From: Ophelia neglecta
Taxonomy: Eukaryota
Length of the DNA stretch: 64,000 nt
Reading direction: 5' to 3'
Assembly: GCA_965285935.1 (NCBI GenBank)
Contig: OZ260662.1
Span: 79,050,001 to 79,114,000, forward strand
Each line of letters starts with the position of its first letter. Position 1 is the first letter of the stretch. Under the pieces are notes generated by a model. It saw only the letters and a list, made by a program, of their open reading frames with translations, was not told the origin of the DNA and made no database searches. A program made the position numbers and the translations under genes. Of this stretch, positions 429 to 62,466 are shown in pieces.

Positions 429-3400
429 CTGCAAAATAAAAATTATTCTTTGTTTAGCTGGATGTTAAGAATGAAATATACACATGGCTTGATAACAAGG
501 TAACTAGTGGTTTGGACAAGTCATCTTTATTAAGTGTAATTTTGTCCATGTGATATCTCTAAAAAAGTGTTTGCAATTAACAAACAATTAAACAATTGAA
601 ATCATTCGTCTTAAAAACTACATAGGTAGTCCATGCATTTGATATCCAAACGAGGCACTTTTCATTATTTCTACTAACCCACGTCCAGATCGAATATTTT
701 GTTTCGTTTTATTTAGTAGGCATAGTTTTAGTAGACTCGCGTTGAATATCAAATACATAGGCCTTCACATTTTTTTCGGGATGGGTTTCCACTGACTACA
801 AATGAGGTGGCGCGCCATCTAAAGGAGTTGAGGAGTACTAAATATACTGAGTCGCCTAAAGAACGAGGTTTCTACGAAGTTAACATAACTTGCAACTCTA
901 TAATGGAGCTAAGCTATCCCAAATCCTTCTCTATTTGTACGTTTGGGTACAGACCTGAAGGACTCGTTTGGAGAGACCTGTTTTCTGAGCCAATTCTTTC
1001 AAATCCTTGGCATCTGGGTTGTGATTCAAAGCAAAGTACATCTTCATTGCACGCAACTGGTGGTGCTTGAAGGAAGTGCGCATACGTTTTTGTCTCTGCT
1101 GTAGGGTGCCGGGGCTCATGGCGCTCAAGTCGCACAGGTCAGATTCGTGGAGACCCATCCCTTAAAGACAGAACAAACAAATAATTAACTTTCGGGCCAT
1201 TGATGACGTACCTGAAGGACGCGCTTATTCAAGCCAGATTTCTGTGCCAGCTGTTTCAAGTCTTTGGCATCAGGATTGTGATTCAAAGCGAAGTAGGATT
1301 TCATTATCCGAAGCTGGTGGTGCTTAAACGACGTGCGCATGCGCTTTTGTCGTGGCGGTTGCAGGTGCATACCATGGCTTAAACCAACATCATTTTCGTT
1401 ACAGCCTAAGCCTGGAAATATGGATACAAAAGAAAGTTTTATTAATGTAATGGGCAAGCGAATGAAATACGACACAACCGGACATCCGCTGTGACATGGC
1501 ATGATGTTCCAGGTTGCCGATGATGTCATCAACCGAAGCTGGAAGTAGGTCAGGTCCCATGCATAATTATGTTAATGAACAAAAGGATAAGGAACATAAA
1601 AAACTTGAAGTCACATTGACCTAGAAATGTAAACTATTGTCAATCCGTTTCGAGACAGTTTTTGCTTAGAAGAAGAGTCTAATTGTTAGGCCGCTGGCAG
1701 ACAATCTCGGTTCTTGGCGGCCAGTAATCTACCCATCCATCATACTCAAATAACGTCAGTTTGGCCGACTCAACTATGAATTATCCGTAACTTGCAGTCC
1801 GGCACTGGTATAGAGCCCTATCCCGATCCCATAAAACATCATATTATCGGCCTTCAGTTCAAGACTATAATTTAACCTAGTCGCAGGCGGTTAGTGATCG
1901 ATTTCCTTCAGCCACTTTCCGTCCATCATTTTTAGTCTGTATACGTGACATGGGTAGAGACTATGACCGAAATAAGTAATTTAGCTGGGGCTGCATTTTC
2001 TAAGCCGTCAATATAGCGAATCTAGGTAAAGTTGTGGCACCTGTTTTAGCTGGTCAAAGTTACAAGTGAAATGTGTTCGCTTTGGTCTATAGTACCCTGT
2101 AACTGGAAGCAGAATGTTGTTCTGGCAGTAAAACTGATCACTTTGTGAGTGGATCGGGTATCGCTAAGTTAAATCTTTTCCGCGTCGTTGTCCGTCATCG
2201 GCAATGATTGATTCAGTGTGGTCGCCTTAACTTCAAAGTCAGGAGGAAACGACGAAACGGGATCGGGAAAACGGAACAGGAAGAAGGTGGGGATGGCTAA
2301 AATCAGGATCTGCTGTGCGCCGTCCAGAAAATGACGAATATCTTTCATCGATGAGCCTATGAACGAATGAAGTCGGAATGTTGTTGGCGACTGGCAGGGG
2401 ACCACACAAGCAAAACTATGAGCAGGTTATCTGCCATCTTTAAACTATTCTGATGCCTTGATTTCTAAAAAAAAGTGCGGGTTGATTTCTAGCCAGGAGT
2501 TGTCAGTACTTGGGGCTCAATTTCACTGATGTTTAACAGCGATATTTGTACAAATACGCCTAGAGGTTTGGAGTCCTGCTAAGACTTAAGGACTTGTTTA
2601 ACTTCCATCTGCACGCTGCTGATTTTAAACAACGGTTACGCTGAACAGAAACATGTCAAGCTGTTTCGCAAACTTAGAACTGAGCTGCTAAGAGGCCCTT
2701 ATCTGTCACTGGTGACCACGGACATATGATTATTAAACCGAACACAATCAGCCGATTCCCCGGATTATAATGTTATTTAATCGAATGTTAGACCAAGAGC
2801 GTGCACTTTTTTTGGACAAAGTAAGGGAATAGTCCGCTTATGATTTGTTATAATAAATCTGAACATCAAAAGAAATTTTATCCTCTCTAAGGGGCTAGTT
2901 GTGTTTTTCGAAGTACAGGTTTTCTTATTTGAAATAATTCCAGTAAACTGACGCACGATGGGATGAGAATGCAACATTACCCACAAAATAGATGTTCGTT
3001 GTTCGTCCTCTAAGATCATATGTGAATCAGACCTATATCGGTAGATTGATCCAATGTTAATTAAGTCGGGCGGACAATTTCAGATCATATAATTCACAAA
3101 TGCAGAAAACGGACAAATAAATGCTTTGTTAAATTGACGGCCCGGGCTTCTGATTGCAGCACATTGGCAACTGAAAAAATCCACTTTGTATGCCCGAGCA
3201 ATACCTCATGCCTGTGTTAACCTTTAGCTGTGCCAGCGTCACTCGGTATCCTGTTGTTTTATCGCCCACCCGGTCGGACAGAGGGCATGATGATTCGGGT
3301 TGGGGCCGGGCCCTCTTAGGGCGTTGTGTTCGCCTGTGGCACGTTGGCCATGAATCACTGATAACCCGAGGCCCTCTGGAATACCCCCTAATCCCCTTGG

Positions 3401-6400
3401 CGGCAACTCCAGCGGGAGGCTCACATCCTAAAGTTAAAGAGATCCCAAATCCGGTGGATACTTAAATTAACTTTGCGACTTAGGAATCTACGGGAAATGG
3501 GGAAGGGCATCCGTTTCTTTCAGCCAAGAGACTGTTATATACCGACAACATTATGAAACATCAATTCCGTTGTATTTCTACTTTTAAGAGCCTAATATAT
3601 AACACCTCCCCTTGCAGATGCTTTGACTGCGTTTCTTTTATAAAGAACTGTAGCTGTAAGGTCCAACGAACATACTGGACTTTTTCTCGAAGTGTAAGCC
3701 CTGGATCGACTAAAATTTATCTACTCTGTCGGAAAGCGTAATGCAGGCATATAAAAAGCTGCTGAGTTTGGCACGAATCCCGTCAGAATATTAAAAAAAG
3801 CGTGACATGTGTGTCAATCGGTTTCAGGTCACGTGAGGCAGGGCCCGACATTTGACGGGCACTCGGCTGATTGGTAAACTGCATGGTGTCTGCTCCGAAC
3901 TAGCGAAAGTGTGCCGAGTGGAGCAAACAGTAACGTCTGCGCCTCAATCGTAACTCTGTGGGAATTTTATGATTTGAAGGAGGGGTTAATATACTCAAAT
4001 ATGATAAACATTATTACGGAAACGAGAAAGCTTTTTTAACGCTTATTAGCTGTATTGATACACGAGGCCACAATACACCTTGGGATGGACTTCTTAAAGT
4101 GTTTCCCTGTAGCCATACACGAGAATCTCGACCTCTGTCGAACCTTAGCCCATACGGACGATGTTTACAAACACTTCGGGTTGAATTTGATTTGTTTGAG
4201 TTCCAATGATTCCTATCTGGCCTCACACTACGCTGGTAGGTAGCAGCACGCGGCCGACAGCAGATACACATCTCAGACATCGGCAGTACTTGATCTCAGC
4301 TCTCTGCTCGAGTGTCTTGTCGACATCCATACGATAAGACAAAGGTAAACATCGCCATCATCCCAAGTCAGCATCCTACCGATCGTCTGCTTGAGGCTTG
4401 CCTCGGGCTCAATACACACGTAAACCTCTGAGATAATGAATATGTGTCCGAAGAACGTTGGCCGACCACAGTGTCACAAAATGATGTCAGTAATATAAGG
4501 ATATGACCATATATAGACTAAAAGAGTCAGTTTTAATAAGTCTAAGGCCAATCACAATTTCAAAGTTGAACTAGTATTTCCAAATGTCAGTCGAACGTTT
4601 TTGACCGGATCGTTCAACGGTATAAAAATATTTTCAAAATATTTTCAAAATGTCGCTTGCCAATCGCATTTATCAAGGTCGACCATAAAATAAAGTGACA
4701 GGAGATTCGCCTTATAGGTCCGCCATATACAAAGCTCGTTACATTTTGATGAAATATAGAAGGAAAACGGCTCTAATTACAATAGAGATTTGATGTTTTC
4801 AAAATGCTGTCATAACATTGAGAAAAAAGTTCATTGTATATAAAATGGTCAGACCCTGAAGATTTTTAGTTGGGACGATATGCAACATACTCCTAATCAG
4901 CTAGTTTATTGAATGAAGAGCATTGATATGCGAAATTATGGATTCTCAGTACGAACATTGGCCAAAAGCCCTCGGTGTGTACACGTATATGTGCATGGCC
5001 TATATTGTTTTCTAAATGAGCCTATGCCGATATATTTTTCTTCCATCTGAGCGTCTCGTTATAGACATGAACGAAGTCAACTTTTGACCTCCATGATTGA
5101 ACAATTAGAAAAAAAGTTGAGTTAAAGCCCCAACTGTAAGCCAACGCCGGATGAAAACATTTCGAGAAAATTCTGTCAAATAAGGTCAAATCAGGCAAAA
5201 CAACAGAGCTAAGCAGGTAATCATACCATTTCAACGAGTATTTGTCGGTAGGAGTGTGTCACGAATGCGTCAATATGTCAAGATAATTAGGCCTAATTTA
5301 CCCAATCCTATCATAACCGCACCTCGAGGCTGAGGCTGTCACGTCTACCGCTGTCAGCAGACGACACGACTAGGGAATCGCGAACCAAAAAAAAGCAAAA
5401 ACCGACCACATCCTTACTCATTAGTGGGGATCAGTCGCATTCAAGCCGGATACAGAAAAAGTCAAAAGATCGCGCAACGTATCTTGGGACGTTCTGGTGT
5501 CCAGCTTTGTCGACAGCTATGTCATTATCAATTCCAAGAAGATTTCTGGCTGAAATTGAAAGGAAAGTAAAGCTTCCAGTAGAACTTGGGCATTCGTTCT
5601 TTAGGATCACATACTTGAGAGTTTGCCGCTTTTGCTTTCATTTCTTCTTACATGCAGAAATGCGTTTATGTGTGTATGTGTATATGTAAAAAATGCATTC
5701 TTTGCAATAATTGCCATGATTAAGACAGTCTGGCGTCGAAGGTACTGTACTAGCAAAGGTTCCATCTTTCCCCTTGTCCATAATAAAAGCTACTTAATTT
5801 CGATTTACAGTTTATTTTTTCCCTGGCCTAAAAAAATGCAGATGTCTTTCCCATCGCTACAGATCATTCTATGAGTTAATTGCCTTTTTTTTATAATTAT
5901 AGGCATAATAACGTATAAAACGAAGTACGTGGTAGGCCCTTGTTTAATGTCAGTTCTTTGGCAAACACAAAACGCTTGGAAGGGTTTATTTAAAATTGGA
6001 GAGTATTTAACGATTACTTTATTCTAATTGGGAACAACATATTTTAAGAGTTAGGGCCTGCATGTCATACACGTATACAGACCAAGCAGTAAATTGTGGA
6101 AAGAAACATGGTATATCGCATAGGCAGCGTTATAAAAAGTGAATTTTTCTGGATTTTGAAGTTAGATAATAAGTTGAAGATGTTAGATGGAGATGACTAA
6201 CTCTTTGTTCTTTCGCATCGATTCATGTAGAACCTAGATAGCCGTTGCTACACGTTAATTTTGGTTCGCTGACGACCGCAGACGATTTAAAGGTGTTTTC
6301 CACCCAATTCACGTTGTTCCAGCCGTTCTTTTGGCAAAGTTGGCATGCTGCGGCGGATTTTCTGGCCGGACGACTGGGCTGAAAGAGGACGGGATCCCCC

Positions 6401-9400
6401 GAGGGGTGCAGGGGAGTCCAAGGGCGAGGGGATTCAAGGCGATAGGCCCCGCATAATACTAGGCAAACCGCGCTCCCACAATGGCATCGACGCAGGTTTA
6501 GAAAGAAGGAGAAAGGTGTGGCGCGGCCATGGAGAGCGGGATTCTCCTCAAGGCTTTCATCGCAGCAGGTTACAGGCCTGGCATTATACGGACCACAGGA
6601 GCGACCTCTACCTTACAATACAAGTCAACAGGAATACCGCTCCTTTGTCACTGGAGAGTACCATTATCCCCTTTAATCCCTGTATAGGCCTCCCTATAGG
6701 TGGCTCCAGTCAGCAGGCGGCAAGAATGGGAAGTGCTGCCCATTCACTTTCATTGCATTCGCATTTCATCACTTGTAGCTTGAATTGTAACGATAGTGTC
6801 AAATAAACTTGTAATAACTGACAGGCCCTTGGCCTTGGAACATATATTGTAGATCCTGGCAGAATGACTGTATAGTGTTTCTACGCGTTTCCAGATTTCC
6901 AGCAGACGAGAAGGCAGGAGTTCGCGCCAGCTGTCAAGTTGGCGAGGCGCGCCTGCAGATTTCCCGGCATGCCCTTCGACCTCTTGTCACTGAGGAAAAT
7001 GTAACGAGCAAGTTTGGTTTCCTTCATCGGCACCTGTTTCAAATCGGCTGCCGACTCAAATTTCAAAATGCACCCAAACAAAACCCTGCCAAATAGGCCT
7101 ACCCAATGCGAAATATTTCAAGAGGAAGAAACTTTGAAACAAGTTAGAGCGAGCTGTTGGCAGGCCTTAAAGAGCACGCGAGGATAACTTTGACCTAGTC
7201 CTATATATCTAAGCCTATAACGATGTATATGCATAGGCTATATGCCTATAACGGCCTATGAAAAGACATCATGGGGGTGGTGGTGGGGGGGGGGCATAAT
7301 CATCCAGATGGGAAGCAGGAAGTACAGTCGTGATTTCCGGGCAAAAAAAAAACAAAGATCATGACAACCAAATAAAGATATCTATCCATTCAGTTAAACT
7401 TGCTTCGAATAGCGATTGCTGGCAATGAGCCCCCTTTTTGCTTCTGTTTGCTATCTCCAAGGTAAATGCAGTTGATTATCATATTCAGCTGATCTTCGTC
7501 TCCATCCCAAGGACTACGTCTGCTAAGACGCCCCCAGACATCAAACCGGCACCCAAACCGGCTCCAGATGCCCACATTCTGCCTGAGGGGGCTGCGAGGC
7601 ACGTGGGGCAGGGAATCCGGACCGGCTAAAACGGCAGCAGTTGTGTAAATCCGAGGTTTGGCTGATACAAACACCGGGTATACAGCACGCCCCGTAATCC
7701 ACACCGCAACACACCGGCAGCCGACATTTTTTGTCGGGGACACCTTTGCGCGAGTTTTCTTTTGAGCAGTTTCCCATCAACACTCATGAGCTTTGATCTA
7801 CGCTGTCTGTTGACCAACAAAGACCCAGCGATATTTACCGAAAGCTACCGGTGAAAAAAGACCTGCGCCGATTCCATAAAACAAGCCGTCTTAGTCTAGC
7901 GCCAGAAAGGAGGCTCACATTTCTAGTGTTACACGTCGCTGTTTGTTCACATTCGAGGTGTGTCTTCGAACAACAGCGAGAAAAAATGTCAACACTAAAA
8001 ATCACTGACGGGCACAACGTGGAGATTGAGTGGAATAAATACCGGGTCTGCGTCAAAATACTGGAAAGCACAGAAAGGCTTTGGTGGTCTTCAACAGCAT
8101 GAAAACTAAAGAGAATATATAGTAGACATGTTTGTAAACTTTGACCTTTTAATAACCACGTGTCGTCTGTGCAGTATTGCCACCTACACAAGAGTTCCCG
8201 TGGTGTTTTTCTTCGTACGGGGACAATGCCTATTTGGACGGGGTAATTTGTACCTAATACACCCCAAACAACACACATTAACACTGCAATGCTGCTTTCA
8301 AAAGTAACTTTGAACAGAACCATAGCTTCAAAGGGAAATAATAATCAAAACGAAACAAAACAATTGAACCCCATAAAGTGAAACGGTTAAGAAAGATGTA
8401 ATCTATTTTTGCGTTTAGGTGAGACATTGAAAGAGAAGAATACAGGTATTTCAATTAAATAAAAAACCTTTTTCTGACAACACTGACAAGCATCTTCGGT
8501 GTCTGTTTTAGAACTTGGAAGTGATTGAATTGGGTGGTTTGTGGGCAGGGGTCGCCCAGGTGTGAATTTTATCAGTTAACTGATCGTCTGCGCGTGGTTC
8601 TAATGACATGGCTTTCACTCTTTGCCTTCAATATTTCCCAATCACAATTATTCACATGTTAATACATAAATGCTCAGCAACTGTAGGTGATTGGCACATA
8701 ATTTCACAATATTGATGATGAGTCTACCAATGGAAGAATTTATAGATCAATTATGGTTAGTATAATGTTTTATTAACAACCTGAAGTATTCGTTGCTGCC
8801 GATTGGACTTGTGTAGTTCTGTATGCATGGGCAGATCATTTTAACGTGTTCACCACTTAAAGAAGCTGTTATAGTAATTATGTTGTTGTACCGAACGTTG
8901 TATATTAAATGCTCATAAATTATGGGGCCTTCTGTAGAATTAATTGAAACATGTTGTTTATTAGCACTTAGAGAGAGATTAGTTAGTTAATGAGTTACAG
9001 GACCTGACAATTATGTCTATGAGCTGTTAAGATTTCATTATGCTCCGTGTTGGATGCTTAAATGCGATGGTGGAGAGGTTAAATGGGAGGCGTGTATGTG
9101 AAACAATAGACATGTCAGTCCCTATCAACTCCAACTGCAACGGGATGAGCCGAATCTGGGGAAACAAAACATTAAGACAACGGCGTTAAATTCCCGTTTC
9201 TCTCGTCCAGTCACTCGTAAACACGAACCTTAAGTGTCCGTGTGAAGCTATTGTTTGCTGTAGACACCTGAAAGATTCAGTCGAGCTATACAAATTGATG
9301 TATTATTGTTTTCAAACCCCCTCCATTGTTTTAGATTCACGCCAATAGGGCGTCCGCAGCGGGTATTGTGTGCGATTTTAAGGCAGTTGGACTTGTATGG

Positions 9401-12400
9401 GGCTTGGGGGCTCTCCAGCCCTGGGGAGCTGGAGAGAAGAGCCTGCCCCCCACGGGGGTAAACATGTCATTGGGGCCCTACCCTATCACCTCCTCGGGTG
9501 CCAAGAATGTCCTTCAAGCTTTCAAGCACACTCAGAGAAACTTGCCGGTAACTTTTTCCGGTGTGGTAAATGAATCTTATTGATATAGTGTATTTTTAAC
9601 ATCTTCGGCTTTACCGCTTTCTCATTGCACAGGTGCAGACGGCAGAATTGGCACATGTTGAGAACTATCCGACGGTTTTAACTGGCTGCCACTCCACTTG
9701 AGACTCGCCGATGGACGTATCAAACCATTTGCGTTCCTATATCGGATCTACTTCAACTTGTGAAATGTTAACAGTTGACTTGATTGTCTTCTTACAAATT
9801 CGAGAACCTGTTTTCAAGTGGCCGGTTTCATTGAGCGCAGTATTTGCCAAGGACCTTGCTATCTTTAGAGTAAATAATTACTTTCCAAATTATAGCCTTT
9901 GAGTAAGGCTAAATGGTGTTTTCAAATAGATTTGAACACTTAACATGTGATTATTTAACTTCGACGAAACTCATTCAATGGAATTTTAGTATAGTTTAAA
10001 AGACATCGCTGAGGGCAAACCATTCTGTTTCAGAAAATGCTTTTATATATAGTTATACGTTAAAACAAATTATTAGTGTTCTTTGACAATAATCTGAAAG
10101 AATCCTTGGTATAATATTCCTGTACGGTTTGTCTAGGCCTATTATATATGTGCAGTCTTGAAATAAATTGACAAGTCGTGTGCTTAAGGGCGAATTTCCA
10201 CATATTTTGCAGGTGCGTAGATCTTGTATTTGCACACTATTCACCGGGTTTGCTTTTATTCGGAGGTCAACTCTTGAGTTGGTCTTTCTCGAAAGTGATT
10301 ATTTGAACATACACGCGATGAGACATTTGGGAAAATATTGGCGTAGACTTGCTAATGTGAAAGGTGTCAAAACTTTCAACATTTAGCCGCGACACAAAAG
10401 ATTTATGTTGTAAAGTTAAACTTGGTTTGAGTGGTCTTTGTCGAGCCGTGTGTTTCTCCGGCTTAAAATGCAAACAGCCGAGTTTTGTGTAGACTTCCCA
10501 CCTATAATACACCAACAAATTCTTTATTTGTTCGCCAAGAAAGTGAAAAGTTCTCCACCGTGCTTTGAAGCGGCATTCTCTTGTTGTATGCCTCAAAACG
10601 TGCTCTTTGAATTTCACTGAGAAGAATACGATTGAAGGTCCTGCTTAGTGTATTAAAAACGCGACAAACTGCTGTCCGCTTTATGTCAGTCATGAGGGTC
10701 GCCTTGTTGATCATTCAGTGCAGCATCTCGAGCAGCACTCGGGATATCTTCAAATCTCACTTTACAGCAGGTTCCATAATAGCGCCTAATGGAATCATTT
10801 GATACAATCGAGACAGATACATTGATAGATAAGGTAATTAGAGGGCTGAAACGTTGTACCCTGGAAGGCCCAACATAGATGGGTCCTTGAATACCTGTTA
10901 AAGAATCTGACAGGTGTGACTAGGCTACTGAGATCTCTCCATTTACCAGGCCGCTCATGTGAATCAAAACTCGAACTGAAATCACAGCATTCCCTACCAC
11001 AGCTGCATTCACCCGTTTTACTATGTTTAAGCTAAAGATCTAGCATCCATTTTATCGTGCAATCTACCTCAATCTTGCGATAGGTGAACTCCCGCTTTTT
11101 CCTTGGCATATCCAAGGTGTGTTCGAATCATTGCGTGACTAGACAATTGCTGTCTGTATTTTCTCTTCCAATGAGGTGGGATTTAAGCCGAATCAATTCA
11201 CTGCAGTGCAAACCAATCCTCTTTGCGGGGGCAAAACGCCGTTACCAGCGAGCATTCCATGATTAAAGGTTAAATATAATGCTTTTGTCACAAATGAATT
11301 GGAATATTGTCGCACAAAAGACGCACACTGTAATAGCCTAATGCGATTTGCGACCGAAAACCCGAAAATTACTCAGTTGTTCAATACGCGATTAAATTAA
11401 GAAAAGATGATTAGCGGCGGGAAATGACCCATGGGCAAAATGGTGTAGGGGTGAATTGCCCTGACCTTCGGTGATATATTGAGAAATGGCGGTAATATAC
11501 AGCTCCCCGGGTTGCGCGCTCAGTACAGGGTTTATAATCGCTCAGACCACGTTTCTAATCACCGCACTGTCCGCTAGGCTCCGGTACGACGTGGCAGAGA
11601 TTACGGTCTGTCAGCTTCGCTCGCTCTGATGTATTGAAGCAATTTCCAACCTCATCCCTAGTTTAATTCGGATTTTAATTGCGATTTCCTTTGTTTGTGG
11701 ATAGCAAGGCTAGCCGATTTCCTATAGATTTGAGCCGTCTTCCCCGAAAGTGATTACATCTCGCGAGCGATGTTTTGATTCATGAAGTCATCTATAGCTT
11801 TTGGCATATTATGGCCTAGAATCTCAAATATAAATCCTTAATAGAATGTCACGAGTGCATTAATCGTATGTTTTACCCTAGTTTGAATACTTGTCTTGAC
11901 AATTTAGGATGGGAGAATATTCATGTCCATCATCACCGAAAGATATCATCATGTTAAAAGACATCAATATTGTGCTTTATCATAGAGGGTTTGGTTTGAC
12001 AATAATTATGCATTGTTTTCAAGTAGAGATAAATTTTAACAACGTTACTTCCTTATGATATTCTAGGGATAGTACACTGATAAGACGAGTCTTCCTTATC
12101 AAGTAACCATGCGTTATGTGGCTTCACAGTTGCGCACCCCTGTTCCGTTCTCGAATTACGTGAAATGTTCCCAAATATAGGCCTACCAGCACCCTTTCAT
12201 CTTTATAGCAGTGCAGCGCCGGTAATTGAGATGAATTAGGGAACAATGGTGTTTGATTTGATTGTGGGATTTGATAGTTACAGTAATACGATTATTACAC
12301 TTATCAATATTGTGGCGCTCGTTAATTTGGCACCCCAATCCGAAGTACCATCTTGTCTAGATTAGGGCTGCACAAAGGGAATCCCCATGACGTCATCTGG

Positions 12401-15400
12401 ACAGGCCTGTAATTGCCCTTTTGAGGAACATCACGCAAATGGCTGGGGATTGTGCATTCCATGTCGGATCAGTTCATATTTCCTATTCATCTCGGTGCAT
12501 CAAAGAGGATGCGGTCACGAACAAAGTTCTGTTTATGAGCTGATCTATTAATTGAGGTATAATAAATTGCTAAAGACATGAGCATCGTGCAGTTGGTCGT
12601 TGCATGCAAACGTTGATTATGTTGGCTTAAGAACACAGGCCAGGAACAGAAATTGAGGAAGCCTGAACCATTCTTATTGTGAGTTACGTCGATGCCGAAG
12701 TATGGCTCAACATTATCAACCTGCAACATCATGTCATAAACAAATGTATGCTGGAAACGACAATCAGAAAAATGACCGTTTATTGGCATTCAATTTCGAC
12801 CTTTATGTAATTAAAATGAAAGAAAATACATTCACCATTTTGTTAATGCAATATCATAGGCCTGCATGGTTTTACATTTCATCATCACTTTGTTCAATTT
12901 AGGTTTATAATACACCTCTAAGTCAGCAAAAGGCAATCTTTCAATATGTGAAACAGATGTGCTTATTAAAGAAATGATTATTGTGTCATATTTTAGATTT
13001 CTATTCATGATTTTAATACTTTTTTTTTTCAAATATGACAGTATGAAAACAAATTAATTGGATGATAACTTACCCAATGATTGTGAACAATGGTCCGAGT
13101 CCGTCTCCAGATGTGACTTCCGTTTCCGGGGACGTCCCTTCTGTACGGCGCCCACGCCGTTGTAGAACGGCACGCCGTGCGAGGGCGCGTTACCGCCATG
13201 ACTGTCCGAGAATTCGTCGCCCATGCCGTTTGGAGGCATGAATTCCCCCTGTAGTACCAGTTCGTAGTGTATTCGACAGTAGATCATATTCTCCTTCATG
13301 CCGAAATGTTCTCCCGTCGTTAACATCTTATTACAGGAGGCGCATGTGAAACAGTTGAGGTGGTAGACGAAGTCACGTGCTCGCATCACCAACTCGTGAG
13401 CAGAAATACCCATGTGGCAGCGCGCGCATCTCTTCAGAGCAAACCTTCTGGAACGGAAGCGGAAACAGTGGTCAGTGACTCATCAGGCACCGATGACAGT
13501 ATAAAGATGAAAAAAGAATGCACTGCAGAGTGAAAATAAAACTAACACGATTCTAAGCCCATTGAATTATAATTATTTTACTTTTCCGGATACAGGACAC
13601 TTCAATTGAAAACAAAAGGTTACATCGACGTTCGTTTAGCCTGTTCATATATCAATATTAGGCACCAATGCATGTGATGACTAAAGAAACACAAGACTAT
13701 CATTTCGCAGCAAGCACTTGAAGAAAACAATAGGACGAAGAGGTTGTTTCTCTGGCTACCAGAGGACCTATTAGTTATCTCAGCACGGCTATTGATTTCG
13801 GAAGGAGTCATGTTAGCAAATGTTTATCTACGACATTAATCCTGTCCCAGTCGATAAGCGTGACAACGTGCAAATCGGGACCTGTTGCCCTCATACAATG
13901 TTGGTATTGACCGGCATCTTGACGTGTTTACATGGTCCAGAAGTCAGCAACCAACAGCGGGCAAGATCCCATGCACGCTTGGTACATGATGAAGCTGGGA
14001 AGGGGATGGTGGGGATGCGGGGGGGGGGGGGGATGTATGTACTAATATAATTCTACCACATCACATGTAGGCTCAGCACCTTTATATGGAAAATTATAAG
14101 GGCCGAAAACTAGAAGTACAGTCACTTTGTGCAACATATAACTGCCCCTTGATCTCAGGAACGTCGTTTAAGGCAGACGACAATTAGCGTCACATCGGCA
14201 GGCTTCCCGCTCTTGTCGATTTCACGCGTAATGATACCGTTTAGTTAGTTCTGGGTGATTATCCACCCGATAATGAGCATGCTTTGTACGTGTCACGTGG
14301 CAAATAGTTTGTCGAGCCTATTTAATCAGGCCCGTCAATATTGGTCATGTTTTGTGCTTCGATCGCCAGCGGTGCAGGGTCAAAATTGATTTTCATTATA
14401 TACATAGGCCTAACTACAATTAAACCGTATATTATGATGTTCTGTTAATAAGTCAAAATAAACACCAAATTGAATCACCCGTGTGAATTTTAATGGAATT
14501 TTCTTTTTTTTTTAATCAAAAACCAGTTAAGACATCAAGGCCTACCATAAGTAAGTCTACTCCATATTGTTTCCAGGATTAGAACTCTAAATTTAATATT
14601 GAACTAAATTCCTCTCATGATCAGAGATTCGACTGTGGTAAACTGAAAAAAGTGCTTGGAAGCCTGAAGAGGGGTGTAATCTTGAGGACACACATATAAA
14701 TATTTTGACCGACTACCGTTCTGGTAAGAGCGCCTGCCTTGTGTAGACACTAGGACTACATCACGTTTAAGCGAGTTGTTCGCTCTGTTTACGCATCAGA
14801 AATCTATTTGGCTTTCTCACCCGCCTTAAATTTTCCGGCTAGGTAATTTTGAATTCAATCTTTTCTTCGCCATCTTGTTGCGCGCTACTTACCAAGTACT
14901 TAGAATGTAATCATTCTATGGCCGTCTTTGTCGGCCTTTGAAATGTTAGATTTCAATACAGTCTTTCAAAGCGCGCGGAGTCTTTCCGATGCGACTCCTT
15001 GTAACCAGATATGCCCGCAGGAAGTTAGCCGGTCTATTTCCAGCCCACGTCCCCGATATGCTATCCATCGCCTATCGGTTAACAGATTTTTTGCCAGCGC
15101 CACAATGGATAACATTTTGCCCCGGGGAGTGTTGTTGATGGTTGAACAATGGCCAGTCCATCTGTGTGTTAGAGAGGGGGCTATTACGCTCCCGAGTCAC
15201 CCCGACAGACAAGCTATTACATGTATGGCCTAGGGCGGGGAGCGAATTGGCGTAAATTCTTTTACATACGACCACAACGCGAGCTGATCCTCGACCTCTT
15301 GAAGAAAAAGGGAAAATGATCTTATTTTAGACCCTCTGCATGCTGTCGTATCGAGCTTGAGGGAGAGCTGAGAGCAGCTCAAAAGGGAGGGAAAAGGTTT

Positions 15401-26969: not shown

Positions 26970-29900
26970 TCCCCTTACCACTTGCATTGAATAATCAAGA
27001 AATCTGATCTTTATGCAGTGCCAATCACTAAGGCAGAAGTCCTATTGCCAGTAAACTTCAATCACTAGACAAAACTCGCTGCGCCTATCAATGTCGCCCA
27101 CATAATCATCGCATTTCCCTTATTGCTGACCTAATCATTGTCGTTTTATAAGATGATTTGATATATTTGTTTCTAAAAAAGACACTGTGTCTAGATCTTA
27201 CCTGTAATAATCCTCTTTGCAATAGATGTTGCCATCCTTGGCGAAGCAGGTGAGCTCGGAGTCGAGGGGGAGCTTACATTCGGAGCACTTTAAGCAGTTC
27301 ACATGCCATTGTTTGTCGACGGCCAGTAGGTAATAACGGTCTATGATCTTACCCCCGCATGCTGCACATTGGCCAGGCTCCGCACCCTCACTGTGTATGA
27401 CAGGCATGGTCTGCAAACAACGGAGAAAAAACATTATATTTGGCTAGCAGACTCTTACTATCAACAGAAAATGTGATTCCATGCATGGTGAAACAATTTA
27501 TTTTTCGCTTCAGGCAACGATTCATCTCAGTGAAAAGAAATCGCAAGACGAATAAGACATTAATGTAAAAAATTGCCATCGACGTGTGCGAATTAAAACG
27601 TTCTGAATGCTGCATAATAGACTTATGTCTATATATTTATTTATTTATTAAACAAGTTTATACGGGGTAGATTATACTAATGACCCCGATGTTGAAATAT
27701 AAAGTGAAATCTTGCTTGAAGGCTACCTCTGTACCCGGACCACCTGTCAAGTCAGACCACTAATATGCAGAACACTCTCACTGTAAAATAAGATAGCATC
27801 TCCATAATCAGTCCGCTATTTAACTGACTGGAAAACACTCACTTGTTTGGCCCAAGCGTAGGATGAAAAAAAGTGAAGTAAGCGCACGTTCGAATTCAAC
27901 ATTGAAAGTATTGGAAGGCCATGGGTCAGTCAATATTGTCATTTCAGAGGCGTTCCGCGATGCATGTTTTATCAGCCGGAAGTAGAAATCGACACTGAAC
28001 GCGGAGAAGAAACCACAGCACCAAACTGACAATATCAGGCAGCTGTTATAGAGTTGTCGGGGAGGAGAAACCTTTTTTGATTAAACTATTTGACAATGCC
28101 AACTCCTTCTTTACTGTAAATTCACAAAGGCAGCCCCAATAGTATGTTGTGTTTTATTGGTAATTATAATAGGTGGCAGCCTTCCAAGGGCTGATCTTGG
28201 CAGTACATATTGGGCGCACAAGTAATTATTAAAAAATAATAATAATGCATGCTTATTATATTGGTCAGTGTAGGCAAATTATATAAATCTCCCAGGAAGT
28301 AAAATTCACGATATTGCCCTCACATTTGGTAAAAAAAATCTCCATCTAAACATGCATGAATGCTCATTGACATTTCAAAATCAGGAACAAAATATTTCCG
28401 ATTGCATTAGCTCTAGAGTTCGCACTGACGCATGGACCATTTCTAAATGATTGACCCTTTTATATGGGGTTCGCATGTATCGCTATATTAACCATAATTA
28501 TACAATGAGAAATGATGAGAGGCTCATAGAACAGGTAATACTTGAGGTAACACTAATCAGATTATTTTACATTGTTAGACAGGATAATCTTTCCTCAGAT
28601 AAACCCTTCACAGCGATTGTCTGCCTAATTTGAACGATAATTGGGGTTAATCCTAATTGCCCAACAATTAATTCTACCGGCGGCCTTTGTACACGAAATA
28701 ATTGAGTAATTGCTTATTCAATGCTCCCGCTGGGGATTTCAATGATCCTGGGATGAAAGCAAACATTTGTCTTGCGCAGTTCAATAAAAGCATATTTGTA
28801 TAAAACATTGGGCTTTTTCCACAAAAAAGTCATTGTAAAACAAGAATAATATTACCATTATTGATTAACATATAATGTATCAGATAAAGCAAAGAGGGTG
28901 GCGTTTTATATAAGATTGTTGATTCTAGAAACGAGAGAAATTCAATAAACAACAACTGTGGGGCAAAAGTTTTAATTCCAAAAAGTCGTTGATATATCAT
29001 TATGTTTGAAAGGTCTTCAATACGTGTTGGAGCCTGTTCACTTTAGATCGACAGATCACCAAGAAATTGGACACCGCTCAAGTAAAAAAAATCTCTTTCT
29101 ACTGTATCCCCGAAAAGGTGGCGTTTTATATTTCCCTCTGCCCAGTAGTGGAAGGATGTGGTCGAGTGAAGGCTGGTGTTTTTTATGCCCCTGTCACCCG
29201 ATATTATTCCATATGATCTCTTTTGTGGTCCCTTGTCAACCGAACACGACGCCAGAGCACGCATGAATTAAACGGCTGAATAATCCATTGAAAAATAATA
29301 CAATATCTCCGTCCTTAAATGTTATCAGCGACATGTCAACAAATTCATCGGACGTGTCACTCAAACTGCTTAGAGGCCCCACTCCCTCTCTGATGACATA
29401 TACGCCCCAGGACAAATACATGTAACTATGGTTACAGCTATAGATATAATTTATGTGCTTCATTCTTAATACAACATACTTTGAATTTTTTTTTTTACAT
29501 CTTATTATGTAGTCTGATCAAGTGCCAAAACTTTCCTAGAATTATTTAAATAATAAAGGCTTGATTGATTACTATAGGGTAGAATTTGACCCACAGACGG
29601 AAAACAAACTAAAATTGTACAAGTAAAGTGAAAAAAAAACCGCAGCAGCAGATTTGAACCTTAGCAAAGAAGGAACAAGGAAAACAATTTAAGAACTTGT
29701 ATAAAATAACATGTGGACGAGCACCCATCATCGGGTCAGTAAGGATAGGCCTGTAGGCCTTCTGTAGGCCTACAAGTAACCCACGTCACTGCTTGTTCTT
29801 TGTCTCTAGGTACATGTATGTAACAGAAGTAAAGCTTCCATTGAGGGATGTAATTATGGCTAGGCTAACTCAGTTTGTAGGTCCAGTGAGAATCGGGTTG

Positions 29901-60196: not shown

Positions 60197-61413
60197 GTAA
60201 TCAGTTTTAATTATGGCTTGATATACGTTATATTGGATTTGTTACTGGTCTTTTTAAGTCTGAAGAGGAAACAGTTTAAATATCCTAACTTCAATGCAAT
60301 CAAATTATTTTTCACTTTGAATATTGGACCAGTCACGCTTTTTTGCCACAGAACTTGTTTATCATACGATGAAATATCAATATGGAGCAGCGGCATATGA
60401 CCGGGTCCAGAATCAATATTGTCATTTATAGCTGTATTTCAGTTTCCTGTTGCGAAATTGTTAAAACAGGGGCGACTTGAACAAAAGAAAGCCATTGATT
60501 GGGCATTGAGTCACCCTAAGCCCTCTGTAATCTTATATAGGCCTACTATCCCGCAAGTCCTCAAGGCTTGTGTAACACTTAGATAAACTGGCAGATTATA
60601 ATGATTTCTGCGTTATTTTAGTTTTCAGTCCTACAAACGTTAACGTTAACAGTTGCAAGCGATGAAACAGCGTTGGCAAATCAAGCCTGTGAATATAAAT
60701 GTGCCGTATTCAACTGCTTAGTGTTTATACAGTTTGTTGTTACTACATGTCATTGAGGACAATGGGCTCCAACCAAGTCAATGAAAGTAAATTCTCATCT
60801 CATCAGTGTATGTATGAATTGGTATTTCATAAAGACATTAAGAGAAAGTATGCTTGAATTCTGGCAGACGATATGACAACGGCGCTCAGGATCTATAATT
60901 ATCTGATAGTTCTGTTTCATTGATTTCCAGCTAGTTACCATTGGATTTAGCTCGGAATGTGTGCTATCACTGGTTTATTATTACTGAACTAGTGGGAACC
61001 AAGTTTGACATCAATAAAACTACTTCTCGTTTTGTGTGAAGACATACAATACTTACCATCACGTGTTTGGAGCTCTTCTTGACTTAATATTAATATGACC
61101 CGATGCTAAGTGTCTGATGACTCTTCAGCCAACATTGATCCTTGCTGGTTAATACCGATTATTGACATACTTCTCTGGCTCAGTCATTTTTGAATATCAT
61201 ATGTTCTCGAATCTATATATTCATGCGTAGAATATTGCGGAGCTTTGACTAATCCTGATTATGCATTAATATCATGAATGTCAAATGGAACGGCTTCATA
61301 GCCAGAAATTGGCAGAATAGTGAATGGTACTGAGGGATAACACTTCAAGTCAAAACGGAGCATCGGAGAGATAAAGAGAGCATCGCTCTTCTCGGAATTA
61401 TAGCATATTGGGT

Positions 61414-62466
61414 ATGGAGCATATTGTCACCACAAGTACACCAGTAAGAGAAATGGACCAAGTGGGCTCTTCTTTTGTTCATTTTGAACCGCCAAATTTT
61501 GCTAAATATTGCCTGATATTACTCATGTGTTTTGGACTTATTGGCAACACTGTTGTAGTGGTGCTGTATCTAAGAGCGAAGGAGCTCAAGTGTCCGGTTA
61601 ATTTGTTAACTGTGAATCTCGCCTTAGCCGATAACGGAGTTCTACTTTGCGCAACCGGAAAACTGGTCAATATGATCACGAAGAAAGGAATGGTCCCTGA
61701 AAGCGGAAGCTTGGAATGCACCTCATTGGGATTCTTGACGTCTTGGACTTCTTCCTCTTCCCTGATATCCATGACAGTCATCACATTTGCGCGTTATGTG
61801 AGCATTGTCCAAGTACATCTTAAGCGATTTTTAACTTGGAAATTCTGTTTGATGGCGGCTATGTTTGTGTGGTTTTATTCTTTGGCCATTCTTTCTCCTG
61901 TTCTGTACGGATGGTCTCGAATTATTCAAAACCCAATTGCGTTTTCCTGCACTATTGATTATTCATACAGGAAATCATACCTGGCTTTTTTAGCAGTCTT
62001 CGGATACTGTCTACCAACAGGGGCTGTGGGTTATTGTTATGTGAAGATTTTCCAAGTGTTTCGAAGCAGCAAGAGGCGAGTGTTGGCCAACACTCAACTG
62101 CAACATCAGCAACTCCAGCAAAGAACTGTGAACCCTAGTCGTAAAGAGATGCGGTTAGCTGTCCAACTCTTGGTGATCTTCCTCGTGTTTGCTCTGTGTT
62201 GGGCGCCCTACGCCATGTTGAGCTTCACAGACCCAACTGGCCAATTAGGTCCGGGACCTTACATGGCCACTGTAGTTCTGCTTGCGTTTAATTCCTCCGT
62301 CAATATCATCATCTACCTTGCACTCAACAAGACATTCAGGAAAGTAACAATTGAGAAGTTCTTGCCGAAGAGTTTGTGTCCACACTTGAAGACAGTACAA
62401 TCTATGCCTACCCATCAGATTTCTGTCGTGGAAACAAGTGGGACAAATAAAGCAGAGCAAAAGTGA
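61414..62466 (+). CDS. Intronless class A (rhodopsin-family) GPCR, 350 aa; melatonin-receptor-like/opsin-related orphan
   Basis: Seven hydrophobic segments with GN (TM1), NLALAD (TM2), Cys at the top of TM3, ARY at the DRY position, CWAPY (TM6), NSSVNIIIY plus NKTFR (TM7/helix 8). First ATG after the in-frame TAA at 61372 is 61414 (the track's start at 61408 is TTG). AATAAA at 62474-62479. Confidence 0.93.
   Translation: MEHIVTTSTPVREMDQVGSSFVHFEPPNFAKYCLILLMCFGLIGNTVVVVLYLRAKELKCPVNLLTVNLALADNGVLLCATGKLVNMITKKGMVPESGSLECTSLGFLTSWTSSSSLISMTVITFARYVSIVQVHLKRFLTWKFCLMAAMFVWFYSLAILSPVLYGWSRIIQNPIAFSCTIDYSYRKSYLAFLAVFGYCLPTGAVGYCYVKIFQVFRSSKRRVLANTQLQHQQLQQRTVNPSRKEMRLAVQLLVIFLVFALCWAPYAMLSFTDPTGQLGPGPYMATVVLLAFNSSVNIIIYLALNKTFRKVTIEKFLPKSLCPHLKTVQSMPTHQISVVETSGTNKAEQK

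What the first reader, a model, noticed from the sequence alone, without database searches (positions are those of the whole stretch)
955..1411. Tandemly duplicated, apparently mutually exclusive homeodomain exons in an Lhx2/9 (apterous) gene
Seen: two complete copies of the exon encoding linker plus homeodomain residues 1-46, each with a polypyrimidine/AG acceptor in phase 1 and a CAG|GT donor in phase 0. Either copy joins the LIM2 exon to the terminal helix-3 exon in frame. A manual codon alignment of the 46 homeodomain codons gives 22 identical, 19 synonymous and 5 non-synonymous, so the duplication is old and both copies appear to be under purifying selection. Established: vertebrate Lhx2/Lhx9 genes carry one such exon, and tandem exon duplication is the usual origin of mutually exclusive exons (tropomyosin, FGFR IIIb/IIIc, Dscam). 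Inference: this one gene makes two LIM-HD proteins with switchable homeodomains, an intragenic alternative to having two paralogues. I cannot confirm whether this has been reported in this lineage.
Basis: partly seen in the sequence, partly recalled or inferred. Interest (0 to 1): 0.92.

Follow-up and report, generated by a model that had tools for sequence, protein, structure and literature searches.

The report
Two alternative homeodomain exons in Lhx2/9
The only Lhx2/9 (apterous-type) LIM-homeobox gene of this invertebrate, probably an annelid, carries two tandem copies of the exon for the first 46 homeodomain residues; three species keep both copies as coding sequence, so the gene very probably makes two protein versions by either/or splicing, though no RNA data were available to show it.

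Summary
On the minus strand, exon A (1411-1212, 200 nt) and exon B (1160-955, 206 nt) each encode a linker plus homeodomain residues 1-46. Both are phase 1 to phase 0 with AG/GT sites, and a 51-nt intron separates them. The 22/19/5 codon count is exact.

New evidence: two related species (L018, L013) have the same A, mini-intron (50-53 nt), B arrangement. Both copies evolve as coding sequence (pN ≤0.009; variable sites mostly at third codon positions). Exon B has 3-7 times less synonymous change than exon A or the terminal exon, which is usual for a regulated alternative exon.

Including both exons gives a stop after 11 codons in all three species; skipping both breaks the frame. B can therefore be translated only without A. 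The five homeodomain differences (positions 15, 18, 33, 38, 41) avoid base-contacting residues, so the linker and the helix 1-2 surface switch, probably not DNA specificity.

Seven other sampled loci have one such exon. Siboglinid tubeworms have a separate tandem pair. No RNA runs exist here, so splicing is inferred. Precedents exist (C. elegans unc-62 exons 7a/7b, Capitella Meis exon 9); I found none for LIM-homeobox genes.

The parts
27202..27410 (-). LIM1 exon of the Lhx2/9 gene (acceptor ...ttgtttgcag|ACCATG, donor AG|gtaaga; ends in phase 2)
   Evidence: Sequence; Pfam LIM E 1.5e-17
13074..13447 (-). LIM2 exon (374 nt). It ends with ...GRPRKRK...HCSQSL plus one G of a split Gly codon, so its donor is in phase 1
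   Evidence: Sequence; Pfam LIM E 2.2e-16
1412..13073 (-). 11.7-kb intron between the LIM2 exon and exon A. It contains collinear conserved non-coding blocks shared with the relative L013 (for example 10578-10204, 8030-7700, 11426-11256)
   Evidence: blastn, 66-86% identity over 43-384 nt
1212..1411 (-). Homeodomain exon A (200 nt, phase 1 to 0): linker LGCNENDVGLSHGMHLQPPR plus homeodomain residues 1-46 (I15, S18, Q33, S38, N41). Its synonymous divergence is ordinary
   Evidence: orthologues in L018 and L013 with pS 0.53-0.99 and pN <=0.009
1161..1211 (-). 51-nt mini-intron between A and B (50 nt in L018, 53 nt in L013). GTACGT, GCCCG, TTAATT (fits the branch-site consensus yUnAy) and the last 19 nt (TGTTTGTTCTGTCTTTAAG) are invariant. 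The putative branch A lies about 26 nt from the 5' splice site
   Evidence: The flanking introns do not align with L018
955..1160 (-). Homeodomain exon B (206 nt, phase 1 to 0): linker MGLHESDLCDLSAMSPGTLQQR plus homeodomain residues 1-46 (A15, M18, E33, T38, S41). It has weaker-looking splice sites (AAG acceptor, GTCTGT donor) and strongly reduced synonymous divergence
   Evidence: pS 0.07-0.33 and pN 0 in the homeodomain part; 17 of 21 variable sites at codon position 3
429..954 (-). 526-nt intron between exon B and the terminal exon (homeodomain position 46/47)
   Evidence: 437 nt in L013
162..428 (-). Terminal coding exon: homeodomain residues 47-60 (VWFQNARAKYRRN...), a C-terminal tail ending ...LTELFSTSLKAMN, and the stop codon
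   Evidence: 83% amino-acid identity to L013, pS 0.73

Best explanation
This is a pair of tandemly duplicated, mutually exclusive exons in the single Lhx2/9 (apterous-class) LIM-homeobox gene of a spiralian invertebrate, probably an annelid. The LIM2 exon (phase-1 donor at 13074) is spliced either to exon A or to exon B, and the chosen exon is joined to the shared terminal exon at 428. This gives two LIM-homeodomain proteins. They share the LIM domains, the N-terminal arm and the recognition helix. They differ in the ~20-residue linker before the homeodomain and at five positions on helices 1-2 and the turn (15, 18, 33, 38, 41). Shown here: the anatomy; conservation of both exons as coding sequence in three species; the frame logic; and the extra nucleotide-level constraint on exon B and the mini-intron. 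Inferred: that both isoforms are made, with A as the default exon and B as the regulated one (weaker sites, constrained synonymous positions pointing to exonic splicing signals). Also inferred are two safeguards for exclusivity. One is steric: the 50-53-nt intron places the likely branch point only ~26 nt from A's donor, as in alpha-tropomyosin exons 2/3. The other is the frame: A+B transcripts reach a stop after 11 codons of B and would be open to nonsense-mediated decay. Because no base-contacting residue changes, the isoforms more likely differ in partner binding or regulation than in DNA specificity. For example, an S-P site in the B linker is conserved in all three species.
For: Anatomy and codon counts. 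Two LIM domains and two half-homeodomains. Single Lhx2/9 locus. Real DNA at normal depth. The same A, mini-intron, B arrangement in L013 and L018, aligned. Homeodomain part, three species pairs: exon A pS 0.53/0.83/0.99 with pN <=0.009; exon B pS 0.07/0.29/0.33 with pN 0; Fisher p 3e-4, 1e-4, 2e-8. The terminal exon between window and L013 has pS 0.73, so B is the outlier. Variable sites by codon position: A 12/4/47, B 3/1/17, p 1e-5 for an excess at position 3. B read after A hits a stop after 11 codons in all three species. With L018, the block from about 1420 to 931 aligns but the flanking introns do not. Precedents for alternative homeodomain exons: PMC3585033 and PMC3140891.
Against: There is no transcript evidence. 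No RNA run holds this stretch, and no spliced B-containing product appeared among short proteins. That search cannot see full-length proteins, so its blank is weak. The steric argument rests on limits measured in mammals and flies, recalled from memory. Many invertebrates splice ~50-nt introns, and the minimum intron size of this genome was not measured. No competing RNA structure or docking/selector pair was found. The reduced synonymous rate of B could have another cause, such as an overlapping regulatory element. Only three species carry the pair, and their identities are unknown.
Confidence: 0.72

Rival explanations
1. Only one of the two exons is ever used in mature mRNA. The other is a silent duplicate kept for a non-coding reason, for example as part of an enhancer or a splicing-control element.
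For: No RNA data are available. The locus is rich in conserved non-coding blocks. Exon B is conserved at the nucleotide level beyond what coding requires.
Against: Both exons change mostly at third codon positions of the homeodomain frame (A 47 of 63, B 17 of 21 variable sites). pN/pS is about 0.0-0.1. Both keep open frames and AG/GT sites in three species. A purely non-coding element would not show this periodicity.
Confidence: 0.08
2. Exon B is the first coding exon of an internal-promoter transcript that encodes a LIM-less homeodomain protein. Its frame opens with ATG at the third base of the exon (MGLH...), and this is conserved in all three species.
For: The ATG is conserved at 1158-1156 and at the matching places in L013 and L018. 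Truncated LIM-homeodomain isoforms that change activity are known in the family (Lhx9-alpha; from memory).
Against: The 19 nt just upstream (polypyrimidine tract plus AG) are invariant in three species, as expected of a used 3' splice site. 'G-MGL' also opens the same internal exon in scallop and Haliotis Lhx2/9, where it follows LIM2, so the Met is inherited linker sequence.
Confidence: 0.08
3. Exon B acts mainly as a poison exon. It is included after A, which gives a premature stop, so Lhx2/9 output is tuned by unproductive splicing and no second protein is made.
For: A+B gives a stop after 11 codons of B in all three species. Poison exons are often very highly conserved at the nucleotide level (general knowledge).
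Against: B is constrained as a homeodomain reading frame: pN is 0 in the homeodomain part and changes cluster at third positions. A poison exon needs no such constraint. The 50-53-nt intron with a branch site ~26 nt from the donor makes A-to-B splicing the least favourable join.
Confidence: 0.07
4. The second copy is an assembly or haplotype artefact.
For: None found.
Against: The copies differ at 24% of homeodomain bases and have unrelated linkers. One contig spans both at normal depth in three read sets. The same pair occurs in two other species.
Confidence: 0.01

Closest known systems
C. elegans unc-62 (Meis/Homothorax) exons 7a/7b
   Same: [quoted passage not shown]
   Different: It is a TALE-class gene in a nematode and is shown experimentally. 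Here the gene is LIM-class, the evidence is comparative only, and the linker to the LIM domains is swapped as well.
Capitella teleta Meis exon 9 tandem duplication
   Same: [quoted passage not shown] Exons A and B also differ at 5 homeodomain residues.
   Different: It is a different gene class. The paper mentions it in one sentence and gives no conservation analysis.
FOXP1 exons 18/18b
   Same: Mutually exclusive exons inside the DNA-binding domain of a developmental transcription factor switch its regulatory programme (reviewed in PMC11701043).
   Different: The domain is a forkhead domain, and the switch changes DNA specificity (from memory). Here no base-contacting residue differs.
Alpha-tropomyosin exons 2/3 (steric exclusion)
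   Same: Adjacent alternative exons are separated by an intron whose branch point lies too close to the upstream donor for the two exons to be spliced together (from memory: Smith and Nadal-Ginard 1989). Here the intron is 50-53 nt and the candidate branch site is ~26 nt from the donor.
   Different: This was not tested here, and the minimum spliceable intron in this organism is unknown.
Vertebrate Lhx2 and Lhx9 paralogues; Lhx9-alpha splice form
   Same: Same gene family. Vertebrates get two proteins from two genes, each with one exon of this kind (for example the GCNENE... linker in P0142). Exon A keeps that linker motif.
   Different: Diversity there comes from gene duplication, and from a helix-3-lacking isoform (from memory), not from alternative copies of the homeodomain 1-46 exon.
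Siboglinid tubeworm Lhx2/9-like gene (Lamellibrachia satsuma LSAT2_026508; L010)
   Same: It has two tandem exons for homeodomain residues 1-46, both phase 1 to 0, separated by a 49-nt intron and followed by a shared helix-3 exon.
   Different: The divergent copy comes first (179 nt, about 10 homeodomain changes including S7I) and the canonical 200-nt copy second. The mini-intron stays in frame and is read through in the deposited gene model. It is probably an independent duplication, possibly in a paralogue, because the C-terminal tail differs strongly from that of Ridgeia and of this window.

Membership tests
Lhx2/9 (apterous) class LIM-homeobox gene | Two N-terminal LIM domains followed by a homeodomain | tested here: met
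   Pfam LIM in the exons at 27410-27202 and 13447-13074; Pfam Homeodomain in exons A and B
Lhx2/9 (apterous) class LIM-homeobox gene | Homeodomain closest to LHX2/LHX9/apterous rather than to other LIM classes | tested here: met
   The best named hits are all Lhx2, Lhx9 or apterous. The best solved structure is the human LHX9 homeodomain, 2DMQ, E 1e-22. The next LIM-homeodomain locus in the genome is only 44% identical.
Lhx2/9 (apterous) class LIM-homeobox gene | Intron splitting the homeodomain between residues 46 and 47, and a conserved C-terminal ...L(T/S)(E/D)LF motif | tested here: met
   Exons A and B both end at ...KRVLQ and the terminal exon starts VWFQNARAK. The tail ...LTELFSTSLKAMN resembles those of Ridgeia, nemertean and mollusc orthologues.
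Mutually exclusive exons from tandem exon duplication | Adjacent homologous exons with the same phases, nearly equal length and intact splice sites | tested here: met
   200 and 206 nt, both phase 1 to 0, with AG/GT kept in three species
Mutually exclusive exons from tandem exon duplication | Joint inclusion or joint skipping destroys the reading frame | tested here: met
   Each length is 2 mod 3. A+B gives a stop after 11 codons of B in all three species.
Mutually exclusive exons from tandem exon duplication | Each copy is under purifying selection as coding sequence | tested here: met
   pN <=0.009 against pS 0.07-0.99; excess of third-position changes in both exons
Mutually exclusive exons from tandem exon duplication | Transcripts contain one or the other exon, never both or neither | not testable with these tools
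   No RNA run holds the stretch. The single read-laying run could use DNA contigs only.
Mutually exclusive exons: steric-hindrance type | Branch point of the inter-exon intron too close to the upstream 5' splice site | tested here: inconclusive
   The intron is 50-53 nt and the conserved TTAATT lies ~26 nt from the donor. The organism's minimum intron size and the true branch point are unknown.
Mutually exclusive exons: competing RNA structure (docking/selector) type | Conserved complementary intronic elements | tested here: not met
   The fold z-score is +1.8, less stable than shuffles. None of 70 predicted pairs shows a compensatory change. The best reverse-complement match is 15 nt, E 0.7.

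The most novel reading that the evidence does not exclude
Lhx2/9 has evolved 'internal paralogy' at the same homeodomain exon at least twice in annelid-like spiralians: the A/B pair here and the siboglinid pair. Each time a ~50-nt mini-intron enforces either/or use. This parallels the vertebrate Lhx2/Lhx9 gene duplication. Exon B would be a very highly conserved, regulated exon that gives the selector protein a second linker and helix 1-2 surface, and so a second set of partners, without changing its DNA code. A bolder version says the pair is older than the sampled species suggest. Ala15 of B is one base change from the ancestral Thr but two from the Ile of exon A, and single-exon relatives share that Ile. 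B's SPG..QQR linker also recalls arthropod apterous. On that reading, other lineages lost B.
Probability: 0.3. Interest if true: 0.7.

Novelty: new member of a known kind. Interest (0 to 1): 0.58.

Why it matters
Lhx2/9/apterous is a selector gene for brain, sensory-organ and appendage patterning. LIM-homeodomain proteins work through combinations of partners. A conserved either/or switch of the LIM-homeodomain linker and the helix 1-2 surface would add a layer to that combinatorial code within one gene. It would also give a natural experiment on subfunctionalisation by splicing versus by gene duplication (vertebrate Lhx2 and Lhx9). The strongly reduced synonymous change in exon B, together with the invariant mini-intron, marks out a compact ~260-nt candidate splicing-control module that could be tested in minigenes. 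The second tandem pair in tubeworms suggests that this exon is prone to duplicate and be kept. It also shows that at least one deposited gene model (Lamellibrachia) reads straight through such a pair.

Tried and rejected
1. RNA evidence. The run search found only three DNA read sets from one sample. Laying them confirmed the DNA but says nothing about splicing.

2. Spliced products in protein databases. The exon B query returned genomic exon-sized reading frames only. Full-length relatives are outside that tool's length window.

3. Joined models. So there was no full-length search and no structure prediction of the two isoforms.

4. Competing RNA structures, known RNA families and antisense reading frames over exon B: nothing found.

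5. Identifying the organism. A mitochondrial ND3 fragment gave annelids as the best named hits, at only 55-70% identity. I report 'probably an annelid' as tentative. The Lhx2/9 exons are about equally distant from mollusc, nemertean, brachiopod and annelid orthologues.

6. Ancient origin of B from its linker. B resembles arthropod linkers (SPG..QQR). But SPG also occurs in amphioxus, and the opening 'G-[LM]GL' is shared by both exons and other spiralians. I rejected this as evidence and kept it only as a lead.

7. Orthology of the siboglinid pair with A/B. This cannot be resolved from 46 residues, and the order of canonical and divergent copies is reversed.

8. Literature. Eight searches found no report of alternative homeodomain exons in Lhx2/9, apterous or any LIM-homeobox gene. 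The library lacks most subscription journals.

Full report
**What is in the sequence**

The gene lies on the minus strand.
- The LIM1 exon is 27410-27202 and the LIM2 exon is 13447-13074. Both match Pfam LIM.
- The LIM2 exon ends with one base of a split Gly codon, followed by gt at 13073-13072.
- After an 11.7-kb intron comes exon A, 1411-1212 (200 nt; acceptor ...tatttccag, donor CAG|gtacgt).
- A 51-nt intron follows.
- Then comes exon B, 1160-955 (206 nt; acceptor ...tctgtctttaag, donor CAG|gtctgt).
- A 526-nt intron follows.
- The terminal exon starts at 428 (VWFQNARAKYRR...LTELFSTSLKAMN, stop at 164-162).

Both A and B run from phase 1 to phase 0. Each encodes a ~20-residue linker plus homeodomain residues 1-46 (Pfam Homeodomain positions 1-45 in both).

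The whole genome (762 Mb) has only this one Lhx2/9-type locus; the next match is 44% identical. Contigs rebuilt independently from three read sets of one sample span 1-1655 at the depth of the flanks. The pair is therefore real DNA.

**Comparative evidence**

An exhaustive profile search with exon B, followed by exact look-ups of the contigs, found two other species with the same arrangement.
- L013 is an ENA metagenome-assembly contig. Its terminal exon is 83% identical in protein.
- L018 is a 1.2-kb Logan contig.

Both have exon A, a mini-intron of 53 or 50 nt, and exon B, with all splice sites kept (alignment). With L018, the alignable block runs only from about 10 nt upstream of A to 25 nt downstream of B. 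The neighbouring introns do not align.

Nei-Gojobori counts over the 46 homeodomain codons, for the three species pairs:

| Exon | pS | pN |
|---|---|---|
| A | 0.53, 0.83, 0.99 | ≤0.009 |
| B | 0.07, 0.29, 0.33 | 0 |

- The difference in synonymous change between A and B is significant in every pair (Fisher p 3e-4, 1e-4, 2e-8).
- The terminal exon between the window and L013 has pS 0.73. Exon A behaves like an ordinary exon, and exon B is the outlier.
- Variable sites fall at codon positions 1/2/3 as 12/4/47 in A and 3/1/17 in B (excess at position 3 in B, p 1e-5).

Both exons are thus evolving as protein-coding sequence in the homeodomain frame. B carries an extra constraint on its RNA or DNA sequence, as regulated alternative exons commonly do (established knowledge).

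**Why use must be either/or**

Each exon length is 2 mod 3.
- Skipping both exons shifts the frame.
- Including both puts B out of frame, with a stop after 11 codons in all three species.

B's coding constraint therefore makes sense only if B is joined to a phase-1 donor without A. The LIM2 exon is the obvious such donor.

The mini-intron is 50-53 nt. Its conserved TTAATT fits the branch-site consensus and sits ~26 nt from A's donor and ~24 nt from B's acceptor. In mammals and flies that distance is too short for U1 and U2 to assemble on the same intron (the alpha-tropomyosin exon 2/3 case, from memory). I propose steric exclusion, backed up by nonsense-mediated decay. This step is inferred. 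I found no sign of the other known mechanism, competing RNA structures, and no Rfam family or antisense reading frame that would explain B's conservation.

**What the switch changes**

Standard numbering applies (F8, W48, F49, N51, R53).
- The N-terminal arm (QKRMRTSF) is identical in A and B, and helix 3 is shared.
- The differences are I/A15, S/M18, Q/E33, S/T38 and N/S41. These lie on helices 1-2 and the turn, not at base-contacting positions (established homeodomain knowledge; the nearest solved structure is LHX9, 2DMQ).
- The linkers are unrelated in sequence. A keeps the GCNEN motif seen in vertebrate LHX2/9. B has SDLCDLSAMSPGTLQQR, with an S-P site conserved in all three species.

I therefore expect the two proteins to bind the same DNA sites but to differ in cofactor contacts or regulation. 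This is inference.

**Distribution**

A single homeodomain exon was found in eight sampled loci:
- Bulinus truncatus (L011) and L012;
- L014, L015 and L016;
- L022 and L023;
- Owenia fusiformis (L024).

The five loci L014, L015, L016, L022 and L023 share exon A's unusual Ile15.

A separate tandem pair exists in siboglinid tubeworms. In L010 the arrangement is a 179-nt divergent copy, a 49-nt intron, a 200-nt canonical copy, then the helix-3 exon. Several related sequences show the same pair. In the deposited Lamellibrachia satsuma model LSAT2_026508 the in-frame mini-intron is read through. Because the divergent copy is upstream there and downstream here, I favour independent origins, but 46 residues cannot settle it.

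**Organism**

The assembly's mitochondrial contig gave an ND3 fragment whose best named matches are annelids (Pectinaria, Thelepus, Marphysa, Pista and others) at 55-70% identity. This assignment is tentative. The Lhx2/9 exons are about equally distant from all named spiralian orthologues.

**Comparison with what is known**

- Alternative exons for the N-terminal half of a homeodomain are established for C. elegans unc-62 (exons 7a/7b, tissue-specific; PMC3585033).
- A mutually exclusive duplicated Meis exon differing by 5 residues is noted in the annelid Capitella (PMC3140891).
- FOXP1 exons 18/18b are the classic case inside a DNA-binding domain (PMC11701043).

Eight literature searches found nothing for Lhx2/9, apterous or LIM-homeobox genes. 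I class this as a new member of a known kind.

**Limits**

- No transcript data could be obtained.
- Full-length isoform searches and structure predictions were therefore left out.
- The identities of the L013 and L018 species are unknown.

**Verdict**

| Item | Assessment |
|---|---|
| Observation | confirmed |
| Confidence in productive either/or use of both exons | 0.72 |
| Interest | 0.58 |

Noticed in passing
L010:9161-9588 (also proteins P0001, P0151-P0154, P0168, P0179, P0180): Siboglinid tubeworm Lhx2/9-like genes carry their own tandem pair of homeodomain 1-46 exons (179 nt and 200 nt) separated by a 49-nt intron. That intron stays in frame and has no stop in four sequence variants. 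The deposited Lamellibrachia satsuma model LSAT2_026508 reads through it, giving a protein with one and a half homeodomains; this is probably a mis-annotation.
   Followed up: partly
protein P0002 (XP_061722997.1, Cydia pomonella 'Lhx2-like', 155 aa): This protein contains three tandem partial copies of the same homeodomain segment (MKSYFAVNQNPDAKDLKQLAQKTGLSKRVLK...). It could be a repeat array or a faulty gene model in a moth. P0003 and P0004 also contain two near-identical homeodomain stretches.
   Followed up: no
window 1412-13073 (for example 10578-10204, 8030-7700, 11426-11256, 9600-9289): About a dozen collinear conserved non-coding blocks in the LIM2-to-exon-A intron are shared with the relative L013 (66-86% identity over 43-384 nt). 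They are candidate enhancers of Lhx2/9.
   Followed up: partly
window 1178: A C>T difference appears in the contigs of two of three read sets from the same sample, so it is probably heterozygous. It lies in the mini-intron at a G (minus strand) that is invariant in all three species.
   Followed up: no
window 61408-62466 (+): An intronless 352-codon open reading frame encodes a rhodopsin-family 7TM receptor (Pfam 7tm_1, E 9e-34).
   Followed up: partly
G000 contig C223 (17,755 bp; loci L019-L021): On the mitochondrial contig, nad1-nad3-nad2-cox1-nad4L-nad4 lie on one strand, while nad5, cox2, cox3 and cob lie on the other. If the tentative annelid assignment is right this is unusual, because annelid mitochondrial genes are nearly always on one strand (from memory). 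A mis-assembly was not excluded.
   Followed up: partly
protein P0190 (Ridgeia piscesae) versus P0168 (Lamellibrachia satsuma): These two vestimentiferan tubeworm Lhx2/9 proteins have very different C-terminal tails. Ridgeia ends ...LTELFSTSLNAV, like this window. This suggests siboglinids have two Lhx2/9 paralogues, only one of which carries the tandem exons.
   Followed up: no
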